From Macrostomum lignano (Eukaryota), in the NCBI GenBank assembly GCA_002269645.1, contig NIVC01000594.1:454011-518010 (forward strand): a DNA stretch of 64,000 nt, in the 5' to 3' direction. Position numbers and translations under genes: made by a program. Below, piece by piece: positions 1,167 through 56,449 of this stretch (position 1 is its first letter; each line of letters begins with the position of its first letter). The notes below the pieces were generated by a model, which was not told the DNA's origin, made no database searches, and saw only the letters and a program-made list of their open reading frames with translations.

Positions 1167-6854
<5,688 letters not shown>

Positions 6855-7324
6855 AATACTAAATGTTTGCTTTGAAAAGACAGCAAAACAAATTGCTTTG
6901 TTAGTTAGTTTAGACAGTTTAGAAGTGATTAGTAAGATACTCAAGTCGTAACAGTCGCTGTTGTAATAGTTAAGTCGTGAAAAATTAACGAAAATACGCG
7001 AGCAGTCTTCTCATCCTGAAATCCTAGACGTAAATTATTATAATCTGACACTAAATTGTAATGTCGCGATAAAAGTTGTACTTTAAACAAACTTTTAAAC
7101 TTTGAAAACCCATTTAACAAGAAAGAGATTTTTCATTACTTACTAAGTTTTTTATTTGTTTTGAGACTAATTTAGTTTATAAAAAAACGCTAGGAGTTTT
7201 AAAGATACTGGTTGCTATCATAAGGCTGGAATTATTTGAGTAAAAAATATACCTTCATTTTTTACAACGCAACTGAAGTTGTTTAGACTAGACAGCAGAT
7301 TTGGTGCGACTTACTAGGTCAGAA
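6855..7324. promoter_or_regulatory. Probable bidirectional promoter between PTPN11 (-) and the NME8-like gene (+)
   Basis: Divergent start codons at 6854 and 7325 separated by 470 bp of AT-rich, repeat-free sequence. TSSs not determined. Confidence 0.55.
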
Positions 7325-9886
7325 ATGGCAAGGAAAAAGCAAGAAATAGCCCTTCAAAAGGAGCTTAACACGCAAGAAGAATGGGACGACGCAATGACGA
7401 AGGAAGGTCTTTTGATTGTTGACATTTACCAAGACTGGTGTGGTCCTTGTAAGTCGATCGTTAGCCACTTTAGAAGAATAAAGAACGAGTCCGGTGAAGA
7501 TCTTCTTAATTTTGCTGTTGCGAAAGCCGACACAATCGATAGCTTGGATAGGTACAGAGGCAAATGCAAGCCATGCTTTCTATTCTACGGATCAGGAACG
7601 TTAGTAGAAGTCATTCGCGGAGTCAATCCCCCAGTGCTGGAGAAGAAGATCAAGGCTCATTTGACCAACGAACTCAACGTACTGAAGGGCGAACCAGGTG
7701 CCGAGCGAGTAGAAATCAGAGATCCAGAGTTTAAGCACCTTGATGAAGCTGAGCGACTGGCTAAGCAGAAAGCGGACGAGGAAGAGGAGGAAGAAGAACT
7801 CGAGAGAGAAGTCACGGTTGTGCTCATTAAGCCTGATGCGCAACACAGGATTGACGAAATCATGCAGAGACTGGAGGAACGAGGAATCGAAATCCTAGAA
7901 CAGCAAAAGCGAAAACTCACTGACGAAGAGGCCAGGGACTTTTATCGACACTTGGAGGACCAGGAATGGTTCGAGCAGATGATCACCTACATGACGACTG
8001 ACGAATCCACGGTGTTGGTCATCAGCAAAGGCAACTCTGGTATCATCTCGGAATTCCGTGAAATTCTCGGTCCAGCCAATGTTGAAGAGGCGAAGGAGAC
8101 TCAGCCGGAAAGCTTGCGAGCCATGTTCGGCTCAGAGTCATATAAGAATGCCATTCACGCTGCCGACTCTGGTGAAAAGGCAGCGAAGGAGCTGGAGTTC
8201 TTCTTCCCCGAGTTCAAGGTTCCGACTTTTAAAGTTCAGAAAGCCAAGAAGGAGAAGCGCAAAGAGATCGAAAAAACAGTTGCGCTCATTCGGCCTGACG
8301 CCTTCATGGAGTTCAAGGACGAAATCTTGGCCAAGATCAAGGAGGCCGGCTTCGCCATCGCGCTGAGAAAGGAGGTCCAACTGACCAGGGAGCAAGCGGA
8401 AGAGTTCTACTCGGAGAAGAAGGACAGTCCGTTCTTCCCGGAGCTCATCACCAGGATGACCAATGGCCCTGTGCTGGCGCTGGCGCTCGCTAAGGAGGAC
8501 GCCATCAAGGAGTGGCGCAACGCTCTCGGCGAGAAGGACCCCAAGGAGGCCAAGCAGACGCATCCGCAGAGCCTCCGAGCGATGTACTCAAAAGAGGAAA
8601 TTCAGATCAACCTGCTGCACGGCTCGGACTCGTTTAACTCGGCCAAGAAGGAGCTGGACTTCTTCTTCCCGGTCGAGCAGACCCTGGTGGTGATCAAGCC
8701 GGACGCATACGAGAACCGTCGCGAAATCATTCAGAAGGCCAAAGAGGCCGAATTCCGCATTGCAGCACGCAAGGAGCTGGTGCTCAGTGACGAGATGGCG
8801 CGCGAGTTCTACAAGAGCCACGCCGAGAAGGAGTACTTCGAAGAGCTGGTGGCTCATATGACCAGCGGCAAGTCGATCTTCCTCGTGCTCTCCCGCAACG
8901 ATGCCATTCAGGGCTGGCGAGAGTTGATGGGCCTGCCGGATCCGACCCAGGCCCTGGACAACGACCACTCCATCCGGTCAATCTTCGGCAAGGACATCAA
9001 AGCCAACGCTGTACACGGTTCGAGCAGCAAAGAGCACGCGGCGGCTTCAATCCGTTTGATCTTCGGCGAAATACAGTTCGACCACGATGGTAAACGAGTT
9101 CCAGGAACGGGCGACCTGACAGAAGAAGACGAGCTGGAGACCACTGAGGATGAAGACGCCGAAGGGGAGATGCGCGGTCCGAATGGCGAGATCGTTCGAA
9201 CGGACGCTCAAGCTGCTCAAAAATCTGACGAGGAGGAAGGCGAAGGCGGCGACCACGAGCGAGAGCATGAACACGAAGATCAAGAGGGTGAGCACGGGGA
9301 AGGTGAACAACACGATGAAGGAGAGCACAAGGATGAGCATCACGAGGAACAGAAAGAAGAGCAGCATGAAGAGCAGAAGGAAGAGCAGGAAGAAGAGCAG
9401 AAGGAAGAGCAAAAGGAAGAGCAAAAGGAAGAGCAAAAGGAAGAGCAGGAAGAAGAGCAGCATGAAGAGCAAAAGGAAGAGCAGAAGGAAGAACAGGAAG
9501 AAGAGCAGAAGGAAGAGCAGAAGGAAGAGCAGAAGGAAGAGCAAAAGGAAGAGCAGAAGGAAGAGCAAAAGGAAGAGCAGAAGGAAGAGCAGAAGGAAGA
9601 GCAGAAGGAAGAGCAGAAGGAAGAGCAGCATGAAGAGCAGAAGGAAGAGCAAAAGGAAGAGCAGAAGGAAGAGCAGAAGGAAGAGCAGAAGGAAGAGCAG
9701 CATGAAGAGCAGAAGGAAGAGCAAAAGGAAGAGCAGAAGGAAGAGCAGAAGGAAGAGCAGAAGGAAGAGCAGAACCAAGCGCAGAAAGAAGAACAAAAGG
9801 ACGAACAAAAGGACGAGCCGAAAGAAGAGCAAAAGGACGACGGGTCGAAGGATGGGCAGAAAGACGGAGAACAACCAACAGCATAA
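7325..9886 (+). CDS. NME8: Thioredoxin-domain + three NDK-domain protein (NME8/TXNDC3/NME9 family, axonemal dynein IC1 type) with acidic EEQK tail; single-exon CDS
   Basis: N-terminus MARKKQEIALQ.E and WCGPC thioredoxin motif. Three NDK repeats with I[K/R]PDA and N..H[A/G] motifs (KNAIHAADS, INLLHGSDS, ANAVHGSSS). First ATG at 7325; ORF track starts at TTG 7301. NME8 versus NME9 assignment needs phylogeny. Confidence 0.9.
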   Translation: MARKKQEIALQKELNTQEEWDDAMTKEGLLIVDIYQDWCGPCKSIVSHFRRIKNESGEDLLNFAVAKADTIDSLDRYRGKCKPCFLFYGSGTLVEVIRGVNPPVLEKKIKAHLTNELNVLKGEPGAERVEIRDPEFKHLDEAERLAKQKADEEEEEEELEREVTVVLIKPDAQHRIDEIMQRLEERGIEILEQQKRKLTDEEARDFYRHLEDQEWFEQMITYMTTDESTVLVISKGNSGIISEFREILGPANVEEAKETQPESLRAMFGSESYKNAIHAADSGEKAAKELEFFFPEFKVPTFKVQKAKKEKRKEIEKTVALIRPDAFMEFKDEILAKIKEAGFAIALRKEVQLTREQAEEFYSEKKDSPFFPELITRMTNGPVLALALAKEDAIKEWRNALGEKDPKEAKQTHPQSLRAMYSKEEIQINLLHGSDSFNSAKKELDFFFPVEQTLVVIKPDAYENRREIIQKAKEAEFRIAARKELVLSDEMAREFYKSHAEKEYFEELVAHMTSGKSIFLVLSRNDAIQGWRELMGLPDPTQALDNDHSIRSIFGKDIKANAVHGSSSKEHAAASIRLIFGEIQFDHDGKRVPGTGDLTEEDELETTEDEDAEGEMRGPNGEIVRTDAQAAQKSDEEEGEGGDHEREHEHEDQEGEHGEGEQHDEGEHKDEHHEEQKEEQHEEQKEEQEEEQKEEQKEEQKEEQKEEQEEEQHEEQKEEQKEEQEEEQKEEQKEEQKEEQKEEQKEEQKEEQKEEQKEEQKEEQKEEQHEEQKEEQKEEQKEEQKEEQKEEQHEEQKEEQKEEQKEEQKEEQKEEQNQAQKEEQKDEQKDEPKEEQKDDGSKDGQKDGEQPTA
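9343..9840 (+). repeat. Coding 12-bp repeat (GAAGAGCAGAAG) encoding (EEQK)n
   Basis: In frame with the NME8-like ORF. Confidence 0.9.
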
Positions 9887-10933: not shown

Positions 10934-13900
10934 TCAACGAGTCGCAGGCTTCTCCGCGTCCGTCTCCCGATCCGTTAGGTCAGTTTTGCTTGTTCTATCG
11001 AAAGGTTTCGGAAACAGAATTTTGACGGCCAATTCCGATGAGCTGCTAATCCTAACCGGATGGAAAGTGCAGCACAGGTTGCGGTGGATTATCATGATAG
11101 CGCCAGTTACAGGCCTGTCGTCAACTTTAGAAGACGAATGGAATGAAATGAGCGCATTGTTGGGGCCCTCAACGGTGGGGCAGCGTTGGCCAATCCAGTC
11201 AATGTCGCCCGTTTTTACCACTGCAACGAGGCCGTTCCACTGCAGGAACAGTCGAAGGTTTCGGTACTCTGCAATTTTGGGTTTGGGGTTTGGTTTTTGT
11301 CTTTCCACTCGATTTTCTCTCACCCCTCTCAACTATCACGTCGTTGTGTGCCTGCCTCAATACTTCTCTTTCCTCCCTCTATCTTAACCCTCTTTCCTCC
11401 CTCTATCCTCCCTCTATCCTCCCTCTATCTTAACCCTCTTTCCTCCCTCTATCCTCCCTCTATCCTCCCTCTATCCTCCCTCTATCTTAACCCTCTTTCC
11501 TCCCTCTATCCTCCCTCTATCCTCCCTCTATCCTCCCTCTATCCTCCCTCTTTCCTCCCTCTATCCTCCCTCTATCCTCCCTCTATCCTCCCTCTATCCT
11601 CCCTCTATCCTCCCTCTATCCTCCCTCTATCCTCCCTCTATCCTCCCTCTATCCTCCCTCTATCCTCCCTCTATCCTCCCTCTATCCTCCCTCTATCCTC
11701 CCTCTATCCTCCCTCTATCCTCCCTCTATCCTCCTTCTATTCTCCCTCTTTCCTCCCTCTTTCCTCCCTCTTTCCTCCCTCTTTCCTCCCTCTTTCCTCC
11801 CTCTTTCCTCCCTCTTTCCTCCCTCTTTCCTCCCTCTTTCCTCCCTCTTTCCTCCCTCTTTCCTCCCTCTTTCCTCCCTCTTTCCTCCCTCTTTCCTCCC
11901 TCTTTCCTCCCTCTTTCCTCCCTCTTTCCTCCCTCTTTCCTCCCTCTTTCCTCCCTCTTTCCTCCCTCTTTCCTCCCTCTTTCCTCCCTCTTTCCTCCCT
12001 CTTTCCTCCCTCTTTCCTCCCTCTTTCCTCCCTCTTTCCTCCCTCTTTCCTCCCTCTTTCCTCCCTCTTTCCTCCCTCTTTCCTCCCTCTTTCCTCCCTC
12101 TTTCCTCCCTCTTTCCTCCCTCTTTCCTCCCTCTTTCCTCCCTCTTTCCTCCCTCTTTCCTCCCTCTTTCCTCCCTCTTTCCTCCCTCTTTCCTCCCTCT
12201 TTCCTCCCTCTTTCCTCCCTCTTTCCTCCCTCTTTCCTCCCTCTTTCCTCCCTCTTTCCTCCCTCTTTCCTCCCTCTTTCCTCCCTCTTTCCTCCCTCTT
12301 TCCTCCCTCTTTCCTCCCTCTATCCCCCCTCTATCCCCCTCTATCCCCCCTCTATCCCCCTCTATCCCCCTCTATCCTTCTTCTATCCTTCCTCTATCCT
12401 CCCAGCTCACCCTCAATCTCCAGCTCCCTATCCCAGTCCTGGAAGCGCAGCAGAGTCTCAGTGCTCAGCCTGTTCGGCAAGTAGGAGAGCCGGTTACTGG
12501 ACTGGGAGCAAGTGGTCCTTGGCCTGTCCACAACCTCGTAGTCGATGAGAAATCCGCGAGACAAAGAGAGCGACGAGCAGGATAGAAAGTACACATCGCC
12601 AACCAGGGCGGCCAGTGGCAGGTATTTAAATAGCAGCACGAGGTCGCGATACAGGTATCCGCTGAACTGCTCACAGCCTGCGGTGAATTCATTGGAGGAA
12701 ATGAAGCTTGTGATGGGGCGCCCTCTTTGTCAGCGCCTTCTCTGATGGCGCCTTCTATGTTGGCGCCTTTTATGTTTGGCGCCTTTTTATGTTTGGCGCC
12801 TTTTATGTTTGGCGCCTTTTATGTTGGAAGCCAGTTTTATGTTTGGCGCCTTTTATGTTTGGCGCCTTTTATGTTGGCGCCATTTATGTTTGGCGCCTTT
12901 TATGTTTGGCGCCTTTTTATGTTTGGCCCCTTTTTATGTTTGGCGCCTTTTATGTTTGGCGCCTTTTATGTTTGGCGCCTTTTATGTTTGGCGCCTTTTA
13001 TGTTTGGCGTCTTTTATGTTTGGCGCCTTTTATTTCGGTGCCTTTTATGTTGGCGCTGGTGATGTCGCTGCTAACTCTTTCGCTGTTGGTGTTATGGTGC
13101 ATTCTTGAGAGAACACCCAAAATTGAATAAATAAATTTTTTGTTTAATACACATAAATTTACTTTTGTGGCTTGCGAAAATTGTATCGAACAAATGGCAT
13201 GTTTGATTTTAAATTTAAATGTCATGCAGAAGTTAGTTTCCCGTTATTTTGATTTTAAAGTAATTACATGGATATGAATGAAAGGAATAAACATGATTAA
13301 AACAAAATCAGGTCCGGTTAAAAAATAGGTTTACTCCCTCTATGAGTCTATTCCCTCTATCCTCCCTCCATCCTTCCTTTATCCTTCCTTTGTACTCCCT
13401 CTATCCTCTGTCTCTCCTCTCTACTCTATCCTCTCTCTATCCTCCCTCTATCCTCCCTCTATCCTCCCTCTATCCTCTCTCTATCCTCTCTCTATCCTCT
13501 CTCTATCCTCCCTCTATCCTCTCTCTATCCTCTCTCTATCCTCCCTCTATCCTCCCTCTATCCTCTCTCTATCCTCTCTCTATCCTCCCTCTATCCTCCC
13601 TCTATCCTCCCTCTATCCTCCCTCTATCCTCTCTCTATCCTCCCTCTATCCTCTCTCTATCCTCTCTCTATCCTTCTGAAGCTTCCTGAAAACAAGTCCC
13701 AGCTAAAAGCCGAGCACAGAGGAAGCAACTCACAGACGTCCATGAGCCCCATCTCAGCGGCGCAGTGCTCGCACTCGCTCAGGCCTCGCAGTACAATGAT
13801 ATTATTGGGGTAGACAATTTTAAACAGCAACAACATCTGCAGTACATTGAGCTGCACCTGGCCCTGCACGTTAACATACAAATAGTTGCCAAGGAACACG

Positions 13901-14166
13901 TAGGTGGTGCTGCTGGGCCAGCCGTACTGCCGGAAAATGGCCAACAGGTCTCCCAGGTTGCCGTGCAGCTTGCCAACAACTCTACAGCCGACGCTGGACT
14001 TCAACTCCAGCAGCGAGGGCTCCAGACGAAAGATAGCGACGGCGCGTTTGACAATCTGGCTGAAATCCACGCTGGTCAGCGTCTCGCCGTTTATGAGGCG
14101 CTCAGCTGACAGACCGGCCCATTCCTGACAGCTGCTCAAGGCGGTGCGAACCTTCATCGCTGACAT
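10934..14166 (-). CDS. PP1/PPP-family Ser/Thr phosphatase homologue, predicted catalytically dead (344 aa)
   Basis: Exons 14166-13734, 12677-12411 and 11268-10934 (GT-AG, phase 1/1). Colinear with PP1c: IFRLEPSLLEL, GKLHG, YVFLGNY, FKIVYPNNIIVLRG.SEC, FKYLPLAALV, GAIMIIHRNLCCTF. Confidence 0.85.
11370..12400. repeat. 11-bp minisatellite CCTCCCTCT[A/T]T (~90 units), intron 2 of the PP1-like gene
   Basis: 11-nt period; block switch from the TAT to the TTT variant near 11740. Confidence 0.95.
12733..13050. repeat. 16-17-bp minisatellite TTTTATGTTTGGCGCC, intron 1 of the PP1-like gene
   Basis: Tandem units with a GGCGCC core. Confidence 0.9.
13345..13672. repeat. 11-bp minisatellite CCTC[C/T]CTCTAT, intron 1 of the PP1-like gene
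   Basis: Same unit family as 11370-12400. Confidence 0.9.
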
Positions 14167-15352: not shown

Positions 15353-36370
<21,018 letters not shown>

Positions 36371-55081: not shown

Positions 55082-56449
55082 ATGAACGGCCAACAGCCTT
55101 ACTTTCCGACGCAGCTAGGAAACGTTGGATTTGCGGACTTGGCAGCGTATCAATATCTGCCGGCTGCCTACCTCGCCCATCTGCCACAGCCGACTCTGCT
55201 GCCTGCAACACTACCAACGTCACAGGTGCCGCCGTCACAGTCAGCGCCAACACCAATCTATACGGGCAACGACTTTGGCAGCAATCAAATCACTTCAATC
55301 GCTCCAACGACGCAGACAAAAAATGAAACTCGTCTTCCAACATCAGAGGATGAAAATTCTGCCGGAGCCGCTGCCGCCACAAATTCTAACTGGTCGGTCG
55401 ACGAACTGGTTAATCAGCTACTTGCGTCGGTTGATCCTGGGGCTTGGTCATCATGGGGTCTCAATCCCGAGAACAGTCTAAGCGGCGCTGGTGACGGCTT
55501 TAGTAGCGCTACTACGGAGATTCAAACCTCTAGTGAAAACAGCGCCACGAGCTTTGATAGCGGCCACAATGGAACAAACCGTGCTCGCAGACCGAAGCCA
55601 ACACCTAATAGAAGCGAAAAAGAAGCTGTTTGGACTGGCACTATGCCAGTTCGCGTTTACAAGAATGCTAGATTCTCGCAAAAGGTATTTGTCGGCGGCC
55701 TACCGTTGATGGCTAAACCTGGCGAATTACAGAAGGCCTTCAGCGCCCTCGGTAGCACTCGAGTTATTTTGCCGAAAACAAAGAGTCCAACGGGAAGCAA
55801 CCAGATCTACGGCTATTGCCACATCGTTCTTAAGGATGGCAAGTATGTCAAGAGGCTTCTGAGCCGGTGCCAGAAGAACGTCGACAATCCTGACGATTCT
55901 ATCATGATGATAGTGCAGAGCTACGAATACTTCTATGAGCTGCAGCTCAGCAACGTCAAGAAGAACGTTCAGATCATACCTTGGTGCATCAATGATTCTC
56001 ACTACACCCACCAGATGAACAGCGGCGGTGAAAAGCACGTTGTCTTTGTCGGCGCGCTGCACGGCATCATGACGGCGGAGTTCCTTGGGCGCGTGATGTC
56101 CGACCTATTTGGAAACATTGAGTTCGTCACGTTGGACACAGACCGTTGCGATTATCCGATCGGCAGCGCTAGAGTGGGCTTCACCAGCCGCGAGTCCTAC
56201 ATGAAAGCGCTGAAGACGAACTTTGTTAAGATCAAGACCAGCCGTTTCACCAAGGTTGTGCAAATCGAGCCCTACTTGGAGGACTGCGCCTGCTCCATGT
56301 GCGCTCAACGCATCGGTGTCAACTTCTGCAAGTCTGAGATGTGCTTCCGCTACTATTGCGCTCAGTGCTGGGAGCGCGTACACGACGGCCTGGACAGCCA
56401 TAGCATGCTGGAGCACCAGAAGCTGAACAAGAAACGTCAGGAAGAGTAG
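55082..56449 (+). CDS. CPEB1: Cytoplasmic polyadenylation element-binding protein, CPEB1/Orb subfamily, divergent; single-exon CDS, 455 aa
   Basis: WTG.MP..., S.KVFVGGLP (RRM1), VQIIPW, VFVGALHG.MTAE.L..VM.DLFG (RRM2), D...YPIGSARV.F, VQIEPYLED, and ZZ domain C..C...C....C....C..C....H...H. Confidence 0.92.
   Translation: MNGQQPYFPTQLGNVGFADLAAYQYLPAAYLAHLPQPTLLPATLPTSQVPPSQSAPTPIYTGNDFGSNQITSIAPTTQTKNETRLPTSEDENSAGAAAATNSNWSVDELVNQLLASVDPGAWSSWGLNPENSLSGAGDGFSSATTEIQTSSENSATSFDSGHNGTNRARRPKPTPNRSEKEAVWTGTMPVRVYKNARFSQKVFVGGLPLMAKPGELQKAFSALGSTRVILPKTKSPTGSNQIYGYCHIVLKDGKYVKRLLSRCQKNVDNPDDSIMMIVQSYEYFYELQLSNVKKNVQIIPWCINDSHYTHQMNSGGEKHVVFVGALHGIMTAEFLGRVMSDLFGNIEFVTLDTDRCDYPIGSARVGFTSRESYMKALKTNFVKIKTSRFTKVVQIEPYLEDCACSMCAQRIGVNFCKSEMCFRYYCAQCWERVHDGLDSHSMLEHQKLNKKRQEE

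What the first reader, a model, noticed from the sequence alone, without database searches (positions are those of the whole stretch)
10934..14166. PP1-fold pseudophosphatase with five of six metal ligands lost but an intact spliced ORF
Seen against PP1c: GDIHG to GKLHG (D64K, H66 kept), GDYVDRG to GNYLYVN (D92N, R96 lost), RGNHE to RGLSE (N124L, H125S), HGG to SCSS region (H173 lost), no recognisable WSDP/R221, and RAH to KTG (H248G). Hydrophobic core motifs, three clean exons and a 344-aa ORF are preserved. Known: these residues are essential for bimetal catalysis in PPP phosphatases, and pseudoenzymes are rarer in this family than among PTPs. Inference: it is a selected catalytically dead PP1 paralogue that could scaffold or titrate RVxF-type regulators, possibly in germline or cilia given its NME8-like neighbour.
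Basis: partly seen in the sequence, partly recalled or inferred. Interest (0 to 1): 0.72.

Follow-up and report, generated by a model that had tools for sequence, protein, structure and literature searches.

The report
Dead PP1-like phosphatase gene, flatworm
This is a three-exon gene of the flatworm Macrostomum lignano whose protein descends from a PP1-type protein phosphatase but has lost almost all its catalytic residues. Selection still keeps the gene intact, so it is a lineage-specific pseudophosphatase whose partners and function are unknown.

Summary
A minus-strand gene has exons at 14166-13734, 12677-12411 and 11268-10934, GT-AG introns and a 344-aa product. That product is exactly GenBank PAA80181.1 of Macrostomum lignano.

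- **Homology:** it is clearly related to PP1 (PDB phmmer 3.6e-22; Foldseek 4e-17). Pfam gives no hit.
- **Lost residues:** D64K, D92N, N124L, H173C and H248G, plus H125S and R96Q. Only H66 is kept.
- **Not a decaying pseudogene:** a second M. lignano paralogue group, 41% identical, is also dead and shares H125S, both intron positions and 70 derived residues.
- **Selection between the groups:** dN/dS is about 0.4. A neutral ORF survived this divergence in 0 of 5000 simulations.
- **Selection within group B:** 14 synonymous against 5 non-synonymous changes (omega 0.12, p 9e-6).
- **Selection on the window gene:** against its homeologue, exons differ by 0.87% and non-coding DNA by 2.4%. Exons carry no indels where 8 are expected.
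- **Transcription:** the GenBank model comes from an RNA-seq-built annotation.

The RVxF-decoy idea is not supported across the family: the window protein keeps 4 of 9 pocket residues and the paralogue none. The germline or cilia idea rests only on a convergent neighbour. This is a new, uncharacterised member of the small class of PPP-fold pseudophosphatases.

The parts
13734..14166 (-). Exon 1 (433 nt). It runs from the ATG at 14166-14164 to the donor ACGTCT|GTGAGT and encodes residues 1-144 plus one base. It holds GKLHG (in place of GDIHG), GNYLYVNVQG (in place of GDYVDRG) and RGLSECEHCAA (in place of RGNHECASIN).
   Evidence: 98.4% identical to the homeologue L001 with no indels
12678..13733 (-). 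Intron 1 (GT...AG, phase 1). It is mostly tandem arrays: an 11-bp unit x29 at 13352-13674 and a 16-bp unit x19 at 12746-13056.
   Evidence: same intron position and phase in paralogue group B
12411..12677 (-). Exon 2 (267 nt). It encodes FKYLPLAALV, SCSSLSLSRG (in place of CCHGGLSPDL) and the acidic stretch DWDRELEIE.
   Evidence: (100% identical to L001)
11269..12410 (-). Intron 2 (GT...AG, phase 1). It is almost wholly an 11-bp tandem array (CTCTTTCCTCC, 94 copies, 11366-12403).
   Evidence: position and phase conserved in group B
10934..11268 (-). Exon 3 (335 nt including the stop TGA at 10936-10934). It encodes VVKTG (in place of ICRAH), LISFHSSSKV (in place of LVTLFSAPNY), GAIMIIHRNLCCTF (in place of GAMMSVDETLMCSF) and a 40-residue tail of low model confidence.

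Best explanation
SHOWN. The gene encodes a PP1-derived protein of the PPP (calcineurin-like) fold. It has lost five of six metal ligands, the general acid H125 and the phosphate-binding R96. It therefore almost certainly cannot bind the two-metal centre or hydrolyse phosphoesters. It belongs to a small family so far seen only in Macrostomum lignano. The family has two old paralogue groups: A, which includes this gene, and B, about 41% identical. Each group has near-identical homeologous copies from the recent genome duplication. The family was already inactive before A and B split. Since then it has been kept as an intact, spliced ORF under purifying selection, and its model comes from an RNA-seq-built annotation.

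INFERRED. It works by binding rather than by catalysis, as a regulatory or scaffolding subunit. The best-conserved parts between A and B are the remodelled former active-site loops: residues 61-100, 121-140 (motif RGxSECEHCAAxMGLxD) and 181-200 (SLSLxRG). The N-lobe and its re-lined cleft are thus the likeliest functional surface. That conservation could also be structural, because these loops lie in the core of the fold. The canonical PP1 docking sites are not conserved across the family: the RVxF pocket, Y134 and the beta12-13 loop. Loss of R96 and H125, with no recognisable R221, argues against a phospho-substrate trap. The partner and the tissue are unknown.
For: - Homology and fold.
- Loss of catalytic residues against 68 invariant PP1s. 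No Pfam Metallophos hit.
- Group B is also dead (D64N, N124A, H125S, H173N, H248E).
- Both intron positions and phases are identical in A and B.
- 70 shared-derived residues, 45 of them at sites at least 90% conserved in PP1, with conservation peaks at the old active-site loops.
- A against B: dN 0.62, dS 1.5. Codon-position differences are 154/115/188 of 318 (chi-square p 5e-8).
- Neutral simulation: 0 of 5000 ORFs stay open at 0.38 substitutions per site, and 0.24% at 0.2.
- Within B: 14 synonymous, 5 non-synonymous, omega 0.12, p 9e-6, and the only exonic indel is in frame (6 nt).
- Window against homeologue L001: exons 9/1035 differences, non-coding 61/2533 (Fisher p 0.002). Exons have 0 indels where 8.2 are expected (P 2.8e-4).
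- The exact protein is the product of a GenBank model. That annotation was built only from RNA-seq assemblies, using StringTie/TACO plus a de novo transcriptome (PMC5730564).
Against: - No direct expression, activity or interaction data were found.
- Between the two group A copies alone the counts are 4 synonymous and 5 non-synonymous (omega 0.39, p 0.14), not significant by themselves.
- One annotated copy (L005, PAA47705.1) is frameshifted. It differs from L001 only by two single-base homopolymer deletions and no substitutions, which looks like an assembly error.
- RNA-seq reads multi-map among 99%-identical copies, so transcription of this particular copy is not proven.
- The C-terminal lobe of the model has low confidence (pLDDT below 50 at 201-243, 260-281 and 322-344).
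- No orthologue from another species was available. The family's age and constraint are therefore inferred from paralogues within one genome.
Confidence: 0.68

Rival explanations
1. Decaying pseudogene: a PP1 duplicate that lost function and only looks intact by chance.
For: Catalytic residues are lost. Pfam gives no hit. One copy is annotated as truncated. The 4:5 synonymous to non-synonymous counts between the two group A copies are not significantly different from neutral.
Against: - Five distinct intact ORFs exist in two groups that are 59% diverged in protein.
- Splice sites and intron phases are conserved.
- A neutral ORF survived in 0 of 5000 simulations.
- Codon positions differ as 3rd > 1st > 2nd, p 5e-8.
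- Omega is 0.12 in group B.
- Exons are less diverged than flanks and free of indels.
- The gene model is RNA-derived.
Confidence: 0.03
2. RVxF decoy: the dead protein keeps the PP1 RVxF groove and titrates or scaffolds PP1 regulators.
For: The window protein keeps M283, L289, C291 and F293 of the pocket (LCCTF for LMCSF), and V264 becomes L (and direct reading).
Against: - I169Y, L243A, F257V and R261N; the acidic rim D166, E167 and D242 becomes G, D and V. The L243, F257 and D242 equivalents rest on my ungapped reading of a region where automatic alignments differ.
- Paralogue B keeps 0 of 9 pocket residues (C, S and L at positions 289, 291 and 293).
- This lobe is the least conserved between A and B and the least confident in the model.
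Confidence: 0.12
3. Mimic of metal-free PP1: lacking the M1 ligands, it constitutively binds the PP1 biogenesis factors SDS22 and Inhibitor-3 and so tunes the supply of active PP1.
For: SDS22 binds only PP1 that lacks the M1 metal, and such variants stay locked on SDS22 (PMC10776994). The N-lobe, which SDS22 contacts, is the part best conserved with PP1.
Against: Y134 is needed for SDS22 binding, since Y134A fails to bind. It is Met in both paralogue groups. R96 is lost too. The SDS22 interface was not examined residue by residue.
Confidence: 0.07
4. Still an enzyme with different chemistry: the re-lined cleft forms a new metal or Cys-based catalytic or redox site. Its conserved residues are C61, H68, C132, H134, C135 and C201.
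For: These Cys and His residues are identical in groups A and B. Several replace residues that are highly conserved in PP1. The motif SECEHCAA is identical in A and B.
Against: I have no coordinates to show that these residues cluster. C132 is simply PP1's C127. No family is known in which a PPP fold works without the two-metal centre. The phosphate-binding arginines are lost.
Confidence: 0.05

Closest known systems
PP1 catalytic subunit (PPP1CA/B/C, Glc7, PPZ1), PPP family
   Same: It gives the best sequence and structure matches. Shared features are the PP1-like PxLLEL stretch before the first motif, the hydrophobic core motifs (YxFLG, LRG, F..LP.AA), the retained H66 equivalent and the beta14 strand L-x-C-x-F.
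   Different: Five of six metal ligands, H125, R96, Y134, Y272 and the beta12-13 loop are replaced. There is a 3-residue insertion in the GDxVDRG loop. Pfam finds neither Metallophos nor STPPase_N. Residues 201-243 cannot be aligned. Only 21-25% identity.
PfPPP8 and its apicomplexan homologues (PPP-type pseudophosphatase of the Plasmodium basal complex; PMC10317984)
   Same: A PPP-fold protein with mutated metal-binding motifs that is nevertheless functional and conserved. It was described as the first experimentally characterised PPP pseudophosphatase.
   Different: PfPPP8 is a large multidomain protist protein with changes mainly in one motif (GDxxDRG to GNLINRG). The flatworm protein is a stand-alone PP1-sized domain with all the main motifs degraded. 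No specific relationship between the two was looked for or noticed.
Kinetoplastid kPPP and PP2B-like predicted pseudophosphatases (TriTryp phosphatome; PMC2175518)
   Same: Lineage-specific, fast-evolving PPP paralogues with substituted catalytic residues, predicted to be inactive and of unknown role.
   Different: A different lineage and subfamily. They were predicted from sequence only, as this one is.
Other degenerate PPP domains in public data (for example Durusdinium trenchii CAK9014027.1, Echinostoma caproni VDP89135.1)
   Same: Among the 133 nearest representative PPPs that align at all six ligand columns, 18 have at least one ligand changed and 10 have at least three.
   Different: They match the Macrostomum family profile (A1) only at E about 1e-20 to 1e-24 and show different substitution patterns, so they look like independent degenerations. 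The sample is biased because the query profile is itself dead.

Membership tests
Active PPP-family Ser/Thr phosphatase | GDxHG motif (D64 and H66 bind metal M1) | tested here: not met
   GKLHG: D64 to K66, H66 kept as H68
Active PPP-family Ser/Thr phosphatase | GDxVDRG motif (bridging D92, D95, phosphate-binding R96) | tested here: not met
   GNYLYVNVQG: D92N, 3-residue insertion, D95V, R96Q
Active PPP-family Ser/Thr phosphatase | GNHE motif (N124 metal ligand, H125 general acid) | tested here: not met
   GLSE: N124L, H125S. H125S is shared with paralogue group B
Active PPP-family Ser/Thr phosphatase | H173 and H248 (M2 ligands) | tested here: not met
   H173 to C178 (robust). H248 to G254 by the ungapped register; automatic alignments vary but none places a His there
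Active PPP-family Ser/Thr phosphatase | Match to Pfam Metallophos (PF00149) | tested here: not met
   No Pfam family at E<=1. Group B proteins have only a weak precomputed hit
Active PPP-family Ser/Thr phosphatase | Metal-dependent phosphatase activity | not testable with these tools
   Needs recombinant protein, a pNPP or phosphopeptide assay and metal analysis
PPP / calcineurin-like fold (homology, not activity) | Significant sequence and structural similarity to PPP catalytic domains | tested here: met
   phmmer 3.6e-22 to PP1/PPZ chains. Foldseek E 4e-17, TM 0.58-0.71 to PP1, with PP2A and calcineurin close behind. The N-lobe is confident and the C-lobe is not
PP1 subfamily | Closer to PP1 than to PP2A, PP2B or other PPPs | tested here: inconclusive
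   The top 40 PDB sequence hits are all PP1, PPZ or Glc7-type chains, plus one chain named only FAP15 (73-82 bits), ahead of calcineurin and BSU1 (64-67 bits). The margin is small, Foldseek does not separate the subfamilies, and no phylogeny was run
PP1 subfamily | PP1 N-terminal domain STPPase_N (PF16891) | tested here: not met
   No hit. All canonical PP1 hits carry it
PP1 subfamily | RVxF-binding pocket (I169, L243, F257, R261, V264, M283, L289, C291, F293; residue list from my own knowledge of PP1 structures) | tested here: inconclusive
   The window protein keeps 4 of 9 identical residues, with V264 becoming L. Group B keeps 0 of 9. The alignment is uncertain for L243 and F257, and the model has low confidence there
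Pseudophosphatase (pseudoenzyme) | Phosphatase homologue lacking residues essential for catalysis | tested here: met
Pseudophosphatase (pseudoenzyme) | Maintained by purifying selection rather than decaying | tested here: met
Pseudophosphatase (pseudoenzyme) | Expressed as RNA and protein | tested here: inconclusive
   The exact protein is the product of a GenBank model from an annotation built only from RNA-seq assemblies. No copy-specific, tissue or protein evidence was found

The most novel reading that the evidence does not exclude
The former catalytic cleft has been rebuilt rather than merely lost. Its conserved lining is GxLHG, RGxSECEHCAAxMGLxD and SLSLxRG, with invariant C61, H68, C132, H134, C135 and C201. 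It would form a new ligand, metal or redox-sensing site. Alternatively the protein is a permanent mimic of metal-free PP1 that sequesters PP1-maturation factors. Either way it would be a metazoan PP1-derived pseudoenzyme family with a new regulatory mechanism acting on PP1 signalling.
Probability: 0.1. Interest if true: 0.65.

Novelty: new member of a known kind. Interest (0 to 1): 0.36.

Why it matters
Few pseudophosphatases are documented in the PPP family. A 2023 paper on Plasmodium PfPPP8 calls that protein the first experimentally characterised one. This gene would be an animal, PP1-derived example with nearly the whole catalytic apparatus removed, yet under clear purifying selection. It sits in a flatworm where RNAi, in situ hybridisation and transgenesis are routine, so its role could be tested.

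The finding is limited in reach. The family has been seen in only one species, its function is unknown, and degenerate PPP domains turn out to be fairly common in sequence databases. Public records also need a correction: UniRef names the protein 'protein-serine/threonine phosphatase', which it almost certainly is not.

Tried and rejected
I used the 99% identical P0001 and the cluster members instead.
2. The gene ids Mlig023519, Mlig016765 and Mlig024376 gave no hits in the full-text library or in the supplements of four M. lignano papers. Long supplement files are truncated in the store, so absence is uninformative.
3. None of these protein clusters has a Logan (SRA-derived) member. A control gene in the window, the CPEB-like gene, has none either, so this says nothing about expression.
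4. The exhaustive profile search of 1.84 billion representatives found no family member outside M. lignano. The third hit, P0004, is a garbled, frameshifted model of a group B gene.
5. The frameshifted copy L005 could have been evidence of decay. I rejected that because it has zero substitutions against L001 and two homopolymer single-base deletions.
6. The SDS22-decoy idea is weakened because Y134 is Met.
7. The neighbour-based functional inference is rejected. The NME8-like gene is convergent on the other strand, and the paralogue locus has different neighbours.
8. The RVxF groove could not be assessed from the model because pLDDT is below 60 over most of residues 201-290.
9. The long + strand ORFs over the introns (for example 11186-12484) are translations of the tandem arrays and are spurious.
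Full report
**What is there**

The region 10934-14166 holds a minus-strand gene. The ATG is at 14166 and the exons are 14166-13734, 12677-12411 and 11268-10934. Both introns are canonical GT-AG and phase 1, and the stop is TGA at 10936-10934. The product is 344 aa. Both introns are filled with tandem arrays of 11-bp and 16-bp units. The long + strand ORFs across them are translations of these arrays.

The 344-aa protein is exactly GenBank PAA80181.1, BOX15_Mlig023519g2, of the free-living flatworm Macrostomum lignano. UniRef automatically names it 'protein-serine/threonine phosphatase'. The window is therefore part of the Mlig_3_7 assembly.

**Homology and lost residues**

phmmer against all PDB chains gives PP1, PPZ1 and Glc7 at 3.6e-22 to 1e-19. 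Calcineurin and BSU1 follow at about 1e-17. Only residues about 17-183 align well. Pfam reports nothing at E<=1, neither Metallophos nor the PP1 N-terminal domain.

I aligned the protein to human PP1 alpha. I also aligned it to 68 canonical PP1s, in which all these positions are invariant. The result is:

| PP1 residue | Role | Window protein |
|---|---|---|
| D64 | metal ligand | K66 |
| H66 | metal ligand | H68 (kept) |
| D92 | bridging metal ligand | N94 |
| D95 / R96 | relay to H125 / phosphate binding | V100 / Q101, after a 3-residue insertion |
| N124 | metal ligand | L129 |
| H125 | general acid | S130 |
| H173 | metal ligand | C178 |
| H248 | metal ligand | G254 by the ungapped register; automatic alignments disagree |

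R221 cannot be placed.

An AlphaFold2 model was built for the 99% identical homeologue P0001, which differs at five residues. The alignment held the family plus 68 PP1s. The model has pTM 0.73 and mean pLDDT 68.9. The N-lobe scores 80-95, but residues 201-243, 260-281 and 322-344 are below 50. Foldseek against PDB puts PP1 first (E 4e-17, TM 0.58-0.71), with PP2A and calcineurin close behind. The PPP fold is supported. A PP1 origin is the best guess but has not been shown by a phylogeny.

**Is it decaying or selected?**

The database holds a 99% identical copy, P0001 or Mlig016765g1, at locus L001. It also holds a second group of M. lignano proteins only 41% identical: P0002, P0154 and P0155 (Mlig024376g1-3) at loci L002-L004.

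An exhaustive HMMER profile search of 1.84 billion representative proteins found no other member. The next hit after the family is at 1e-32. The third hit is a garbled model of a group B gene.

Group B is dead as well: D64N, N124A, H125S, H173N and H248E. Only D92 and H66 are kept. The two groups share several features:
- the identical H125S change;
- the eight-residue motif SECEHCAA;
- both intron positions and phases;
- 70 residues identical to each other but different from the PP1 consensus, 45 of them at sites at least 90% conserved in PP1.

The simplest reading is that inactivation came before the A/B split.

Since that split:
- dN is 0.62 and dS about 1.5, which is saturated.
- Differences by codon position are 154, 115 and 188 of 318 (chi-square p 5e-8).
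- In simulations of neutral substitution, 0 of 5000 copies of this ORF stayed open at the per-lineage distance of 0.38, and 0.24% did at 0.2.

Within group B the three copies show 14 synonymous and 5 non-synonymous variable codons (omega 0.12, binomial p 9e-6). Their only exonic indel is 6 nt and in frame.

For the window gene against its homeologue L001, the count is 4 synonymous and 5 non-synonymous, which is not significant alone (omega 0.39, p 0.14). However, exons differ at 9/1035 sites and alignable introns and flanks at 61/2533 (Fisher p 0.002). Exons carry no indel where 8.2 events would be expected (P 2.8e-4).

A third group A copy (L005, annotated as a 250-aa protein) is frameshifted. 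It has no substitutions against L001 and two single-base deletions in short homopolymers, on a small 48.7-kb contig. I read this as an assembly error and not as decay.

**Transcription**

I found no direct expression data. The GenBank annotation of Mlig_3_7 was built solely from RNA-seq: StringTie/TACO assemblies plus a de novo transcriptome, with ORFs called by TransDecoder (PMC5730564). The deposited CDS equals my spliced model exactly. That is indirect evidence for transcription and for the splice junctions. Reads multi-map among the near-identical copies, so it does not prove transcription of this particular copy.

**How it probably works**

Catalysis and two-metal binding are excluded as far as sequence can tell. 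A phospho-substrate trap is unlikely because R96 and H125 are gone and no R221 equivalent is recognisable.

The RVxF pocket is only partly kept in the window protein. My residue list comes from my own knowledge of PP1 structures.
- Kept: M283, L289, C291 and F293; V264 becomes L.
- Changed in the window protein: I169Y, L243A, F257V and R261N, and the acidic rim is lost. The L243 and F257 equivalents rest on my ungapped reading of a region where automatic alignments differ.
- Group B keeps none of the nine positions.
- This lobe is the least conserved between A and B and the least confident in the model.

An RVxF decoy cannot be the function conserved across the family.

A decoy for SDS22, which binds only metal-free PP1, is an attractive idea. 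But it needs Y134 (PMC10776994), and Y134 is Met in both groups.

What is conserved between A and B is the N-lobe, especially the re-lined former active-site loops: identity is 0.63 over residues 61-100, 0.70 over 121-140 and 0.60 over 181-200. I therefore favour a non-catalytic binding or scaffolding module that uses this surface. These loops also lie in the fold's core, so their conservation may be partly structural. The partner is unknown.

The neighbouring NME8-like gene (thioredoxin plus three NDK domains; ORF 7301-9886 on the + strand, first ATG at 7325) converges on this gene from the opposite strand. The group B locus has different neighbours. Adjacency therefore gives no functional hint.

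**Comparison with what is known**

PPP-fold pseudophosphatases have been predicted in kinetoplastids (PMC2175518). One, Plasmodium PfPPP8, has been characterised and was called the first in the PPP family (PMC10317984).

In my sample of the 133 nearest representative PPPs that align at all six ligand columns, 18 have at least one ligand changed and 10 have at least three. They include proteins of a dinoflagellate and of the trematode Echinostoma caproni. The sample is biased because the query profile is itself dead. Degenerate PPP domains are thus under-studied rather than truly rare.

**Verdict**

This flatworm family is a new, uncharacterised member of a known kind. It is notable for being animal, PP1-like, almost completely stripped of catalytic residues and clearly constrained. 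It is known from only one species and has no functional data. Interest is moderate to low (0.36).

Noticed in passing
window 11366-12403, 12746-13056, 13352-13674: Both introns of the gene are almost entirely tandem arrays: an 11-bp unit CTCTTTCCTCC x94, a 16-bp unit TGGCGCCTTTTATGTT x19 and an 11-bp unit TCCCTCTATCC x29. On the transcribed strand the 11-bp arrays are purine-rich. The gene spans differ between the homeologous copies (3233, 3181 and 2893 bp for window, L001 and L005), probably from array size (not measured directly).
   Followed up: partly
window 7325-9886 (+): Single-exon NME8/TXNDC3-like gene with a thioredoxin domain, three NDK domains and a long acidic (EEQK)n repeat tail. 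It converges on the pseudophosphatase gene. It is 96.8% identical to the homeologous copy, with many repeat-length gaps.
   Followed up: partly
window 3310-4872 (-); L002 1-2910: The group A locus lies next to an SH2-SH2 (SHP2-like; the homeologue's model also has a Y_phosphatase domain) gene. The group B locus lies next to an SH2-containing inositol 5-phosphatase (SHIP-like) gene. This may be coincidence or a trace of an old segmental duplication.
   Followed up: no
window 23936-27280 (+): Long ORF with the domain set of a Ty3/gypsy-type LTR retrotransposon polyprotein: zinc knuckle, aspartyl protease, RT, RNase H and integrase. I did not examine it further or print it.
   Followed up: no
window 55082-56449 (+): CPEB-like gene (RRM_7 plus CEBP_ZZ). 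The same protein cluster occurs on the contigs of L001 and L005, so synteny is kept across the duplicated blocks.
   Followed up: partly
L005 7280-7320 and 8165-8174: The copy annotated as a 250-aa protein (PAA47705.1) differs from L001 only by two single-base deletions (GGG to GG, TT to T) and has no substitutions. This is probably an assembly indel error that produced a truncated database protein.
   Followed up: yes
P0004 (UniRef100_A0A1I8FQJ0): A 558-aa M. lignano model named 'CRAL-TRIO domain-containing protein' is a frameshift-riddled version of a group B pseudophosphatase gene fused to unrelated sequence. It looks like an annotation artefact of an older assembly.
   Followed up: partly
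window 18001-20000: Extreme strand composition (GC skew 0.62, AT skew 0.56) with overlapping long ORFs on both strands and no Pfam hit. This is probably another low-complexity or repeat block.
   Followed up: no
P0144 (Echinostoma caproni VDP89135.1); P0117 (Durusdinium trenchii CAK9014027.1): Other PPP-like proteins with several metal ligands replaced: H66Y, D92N and H248N in the trematode, and all six in the dinoflagellate. Their substitution patterns differ from the Macrostomum family, so they look like independent cases of PPP degeneration.
   Followed up: partly
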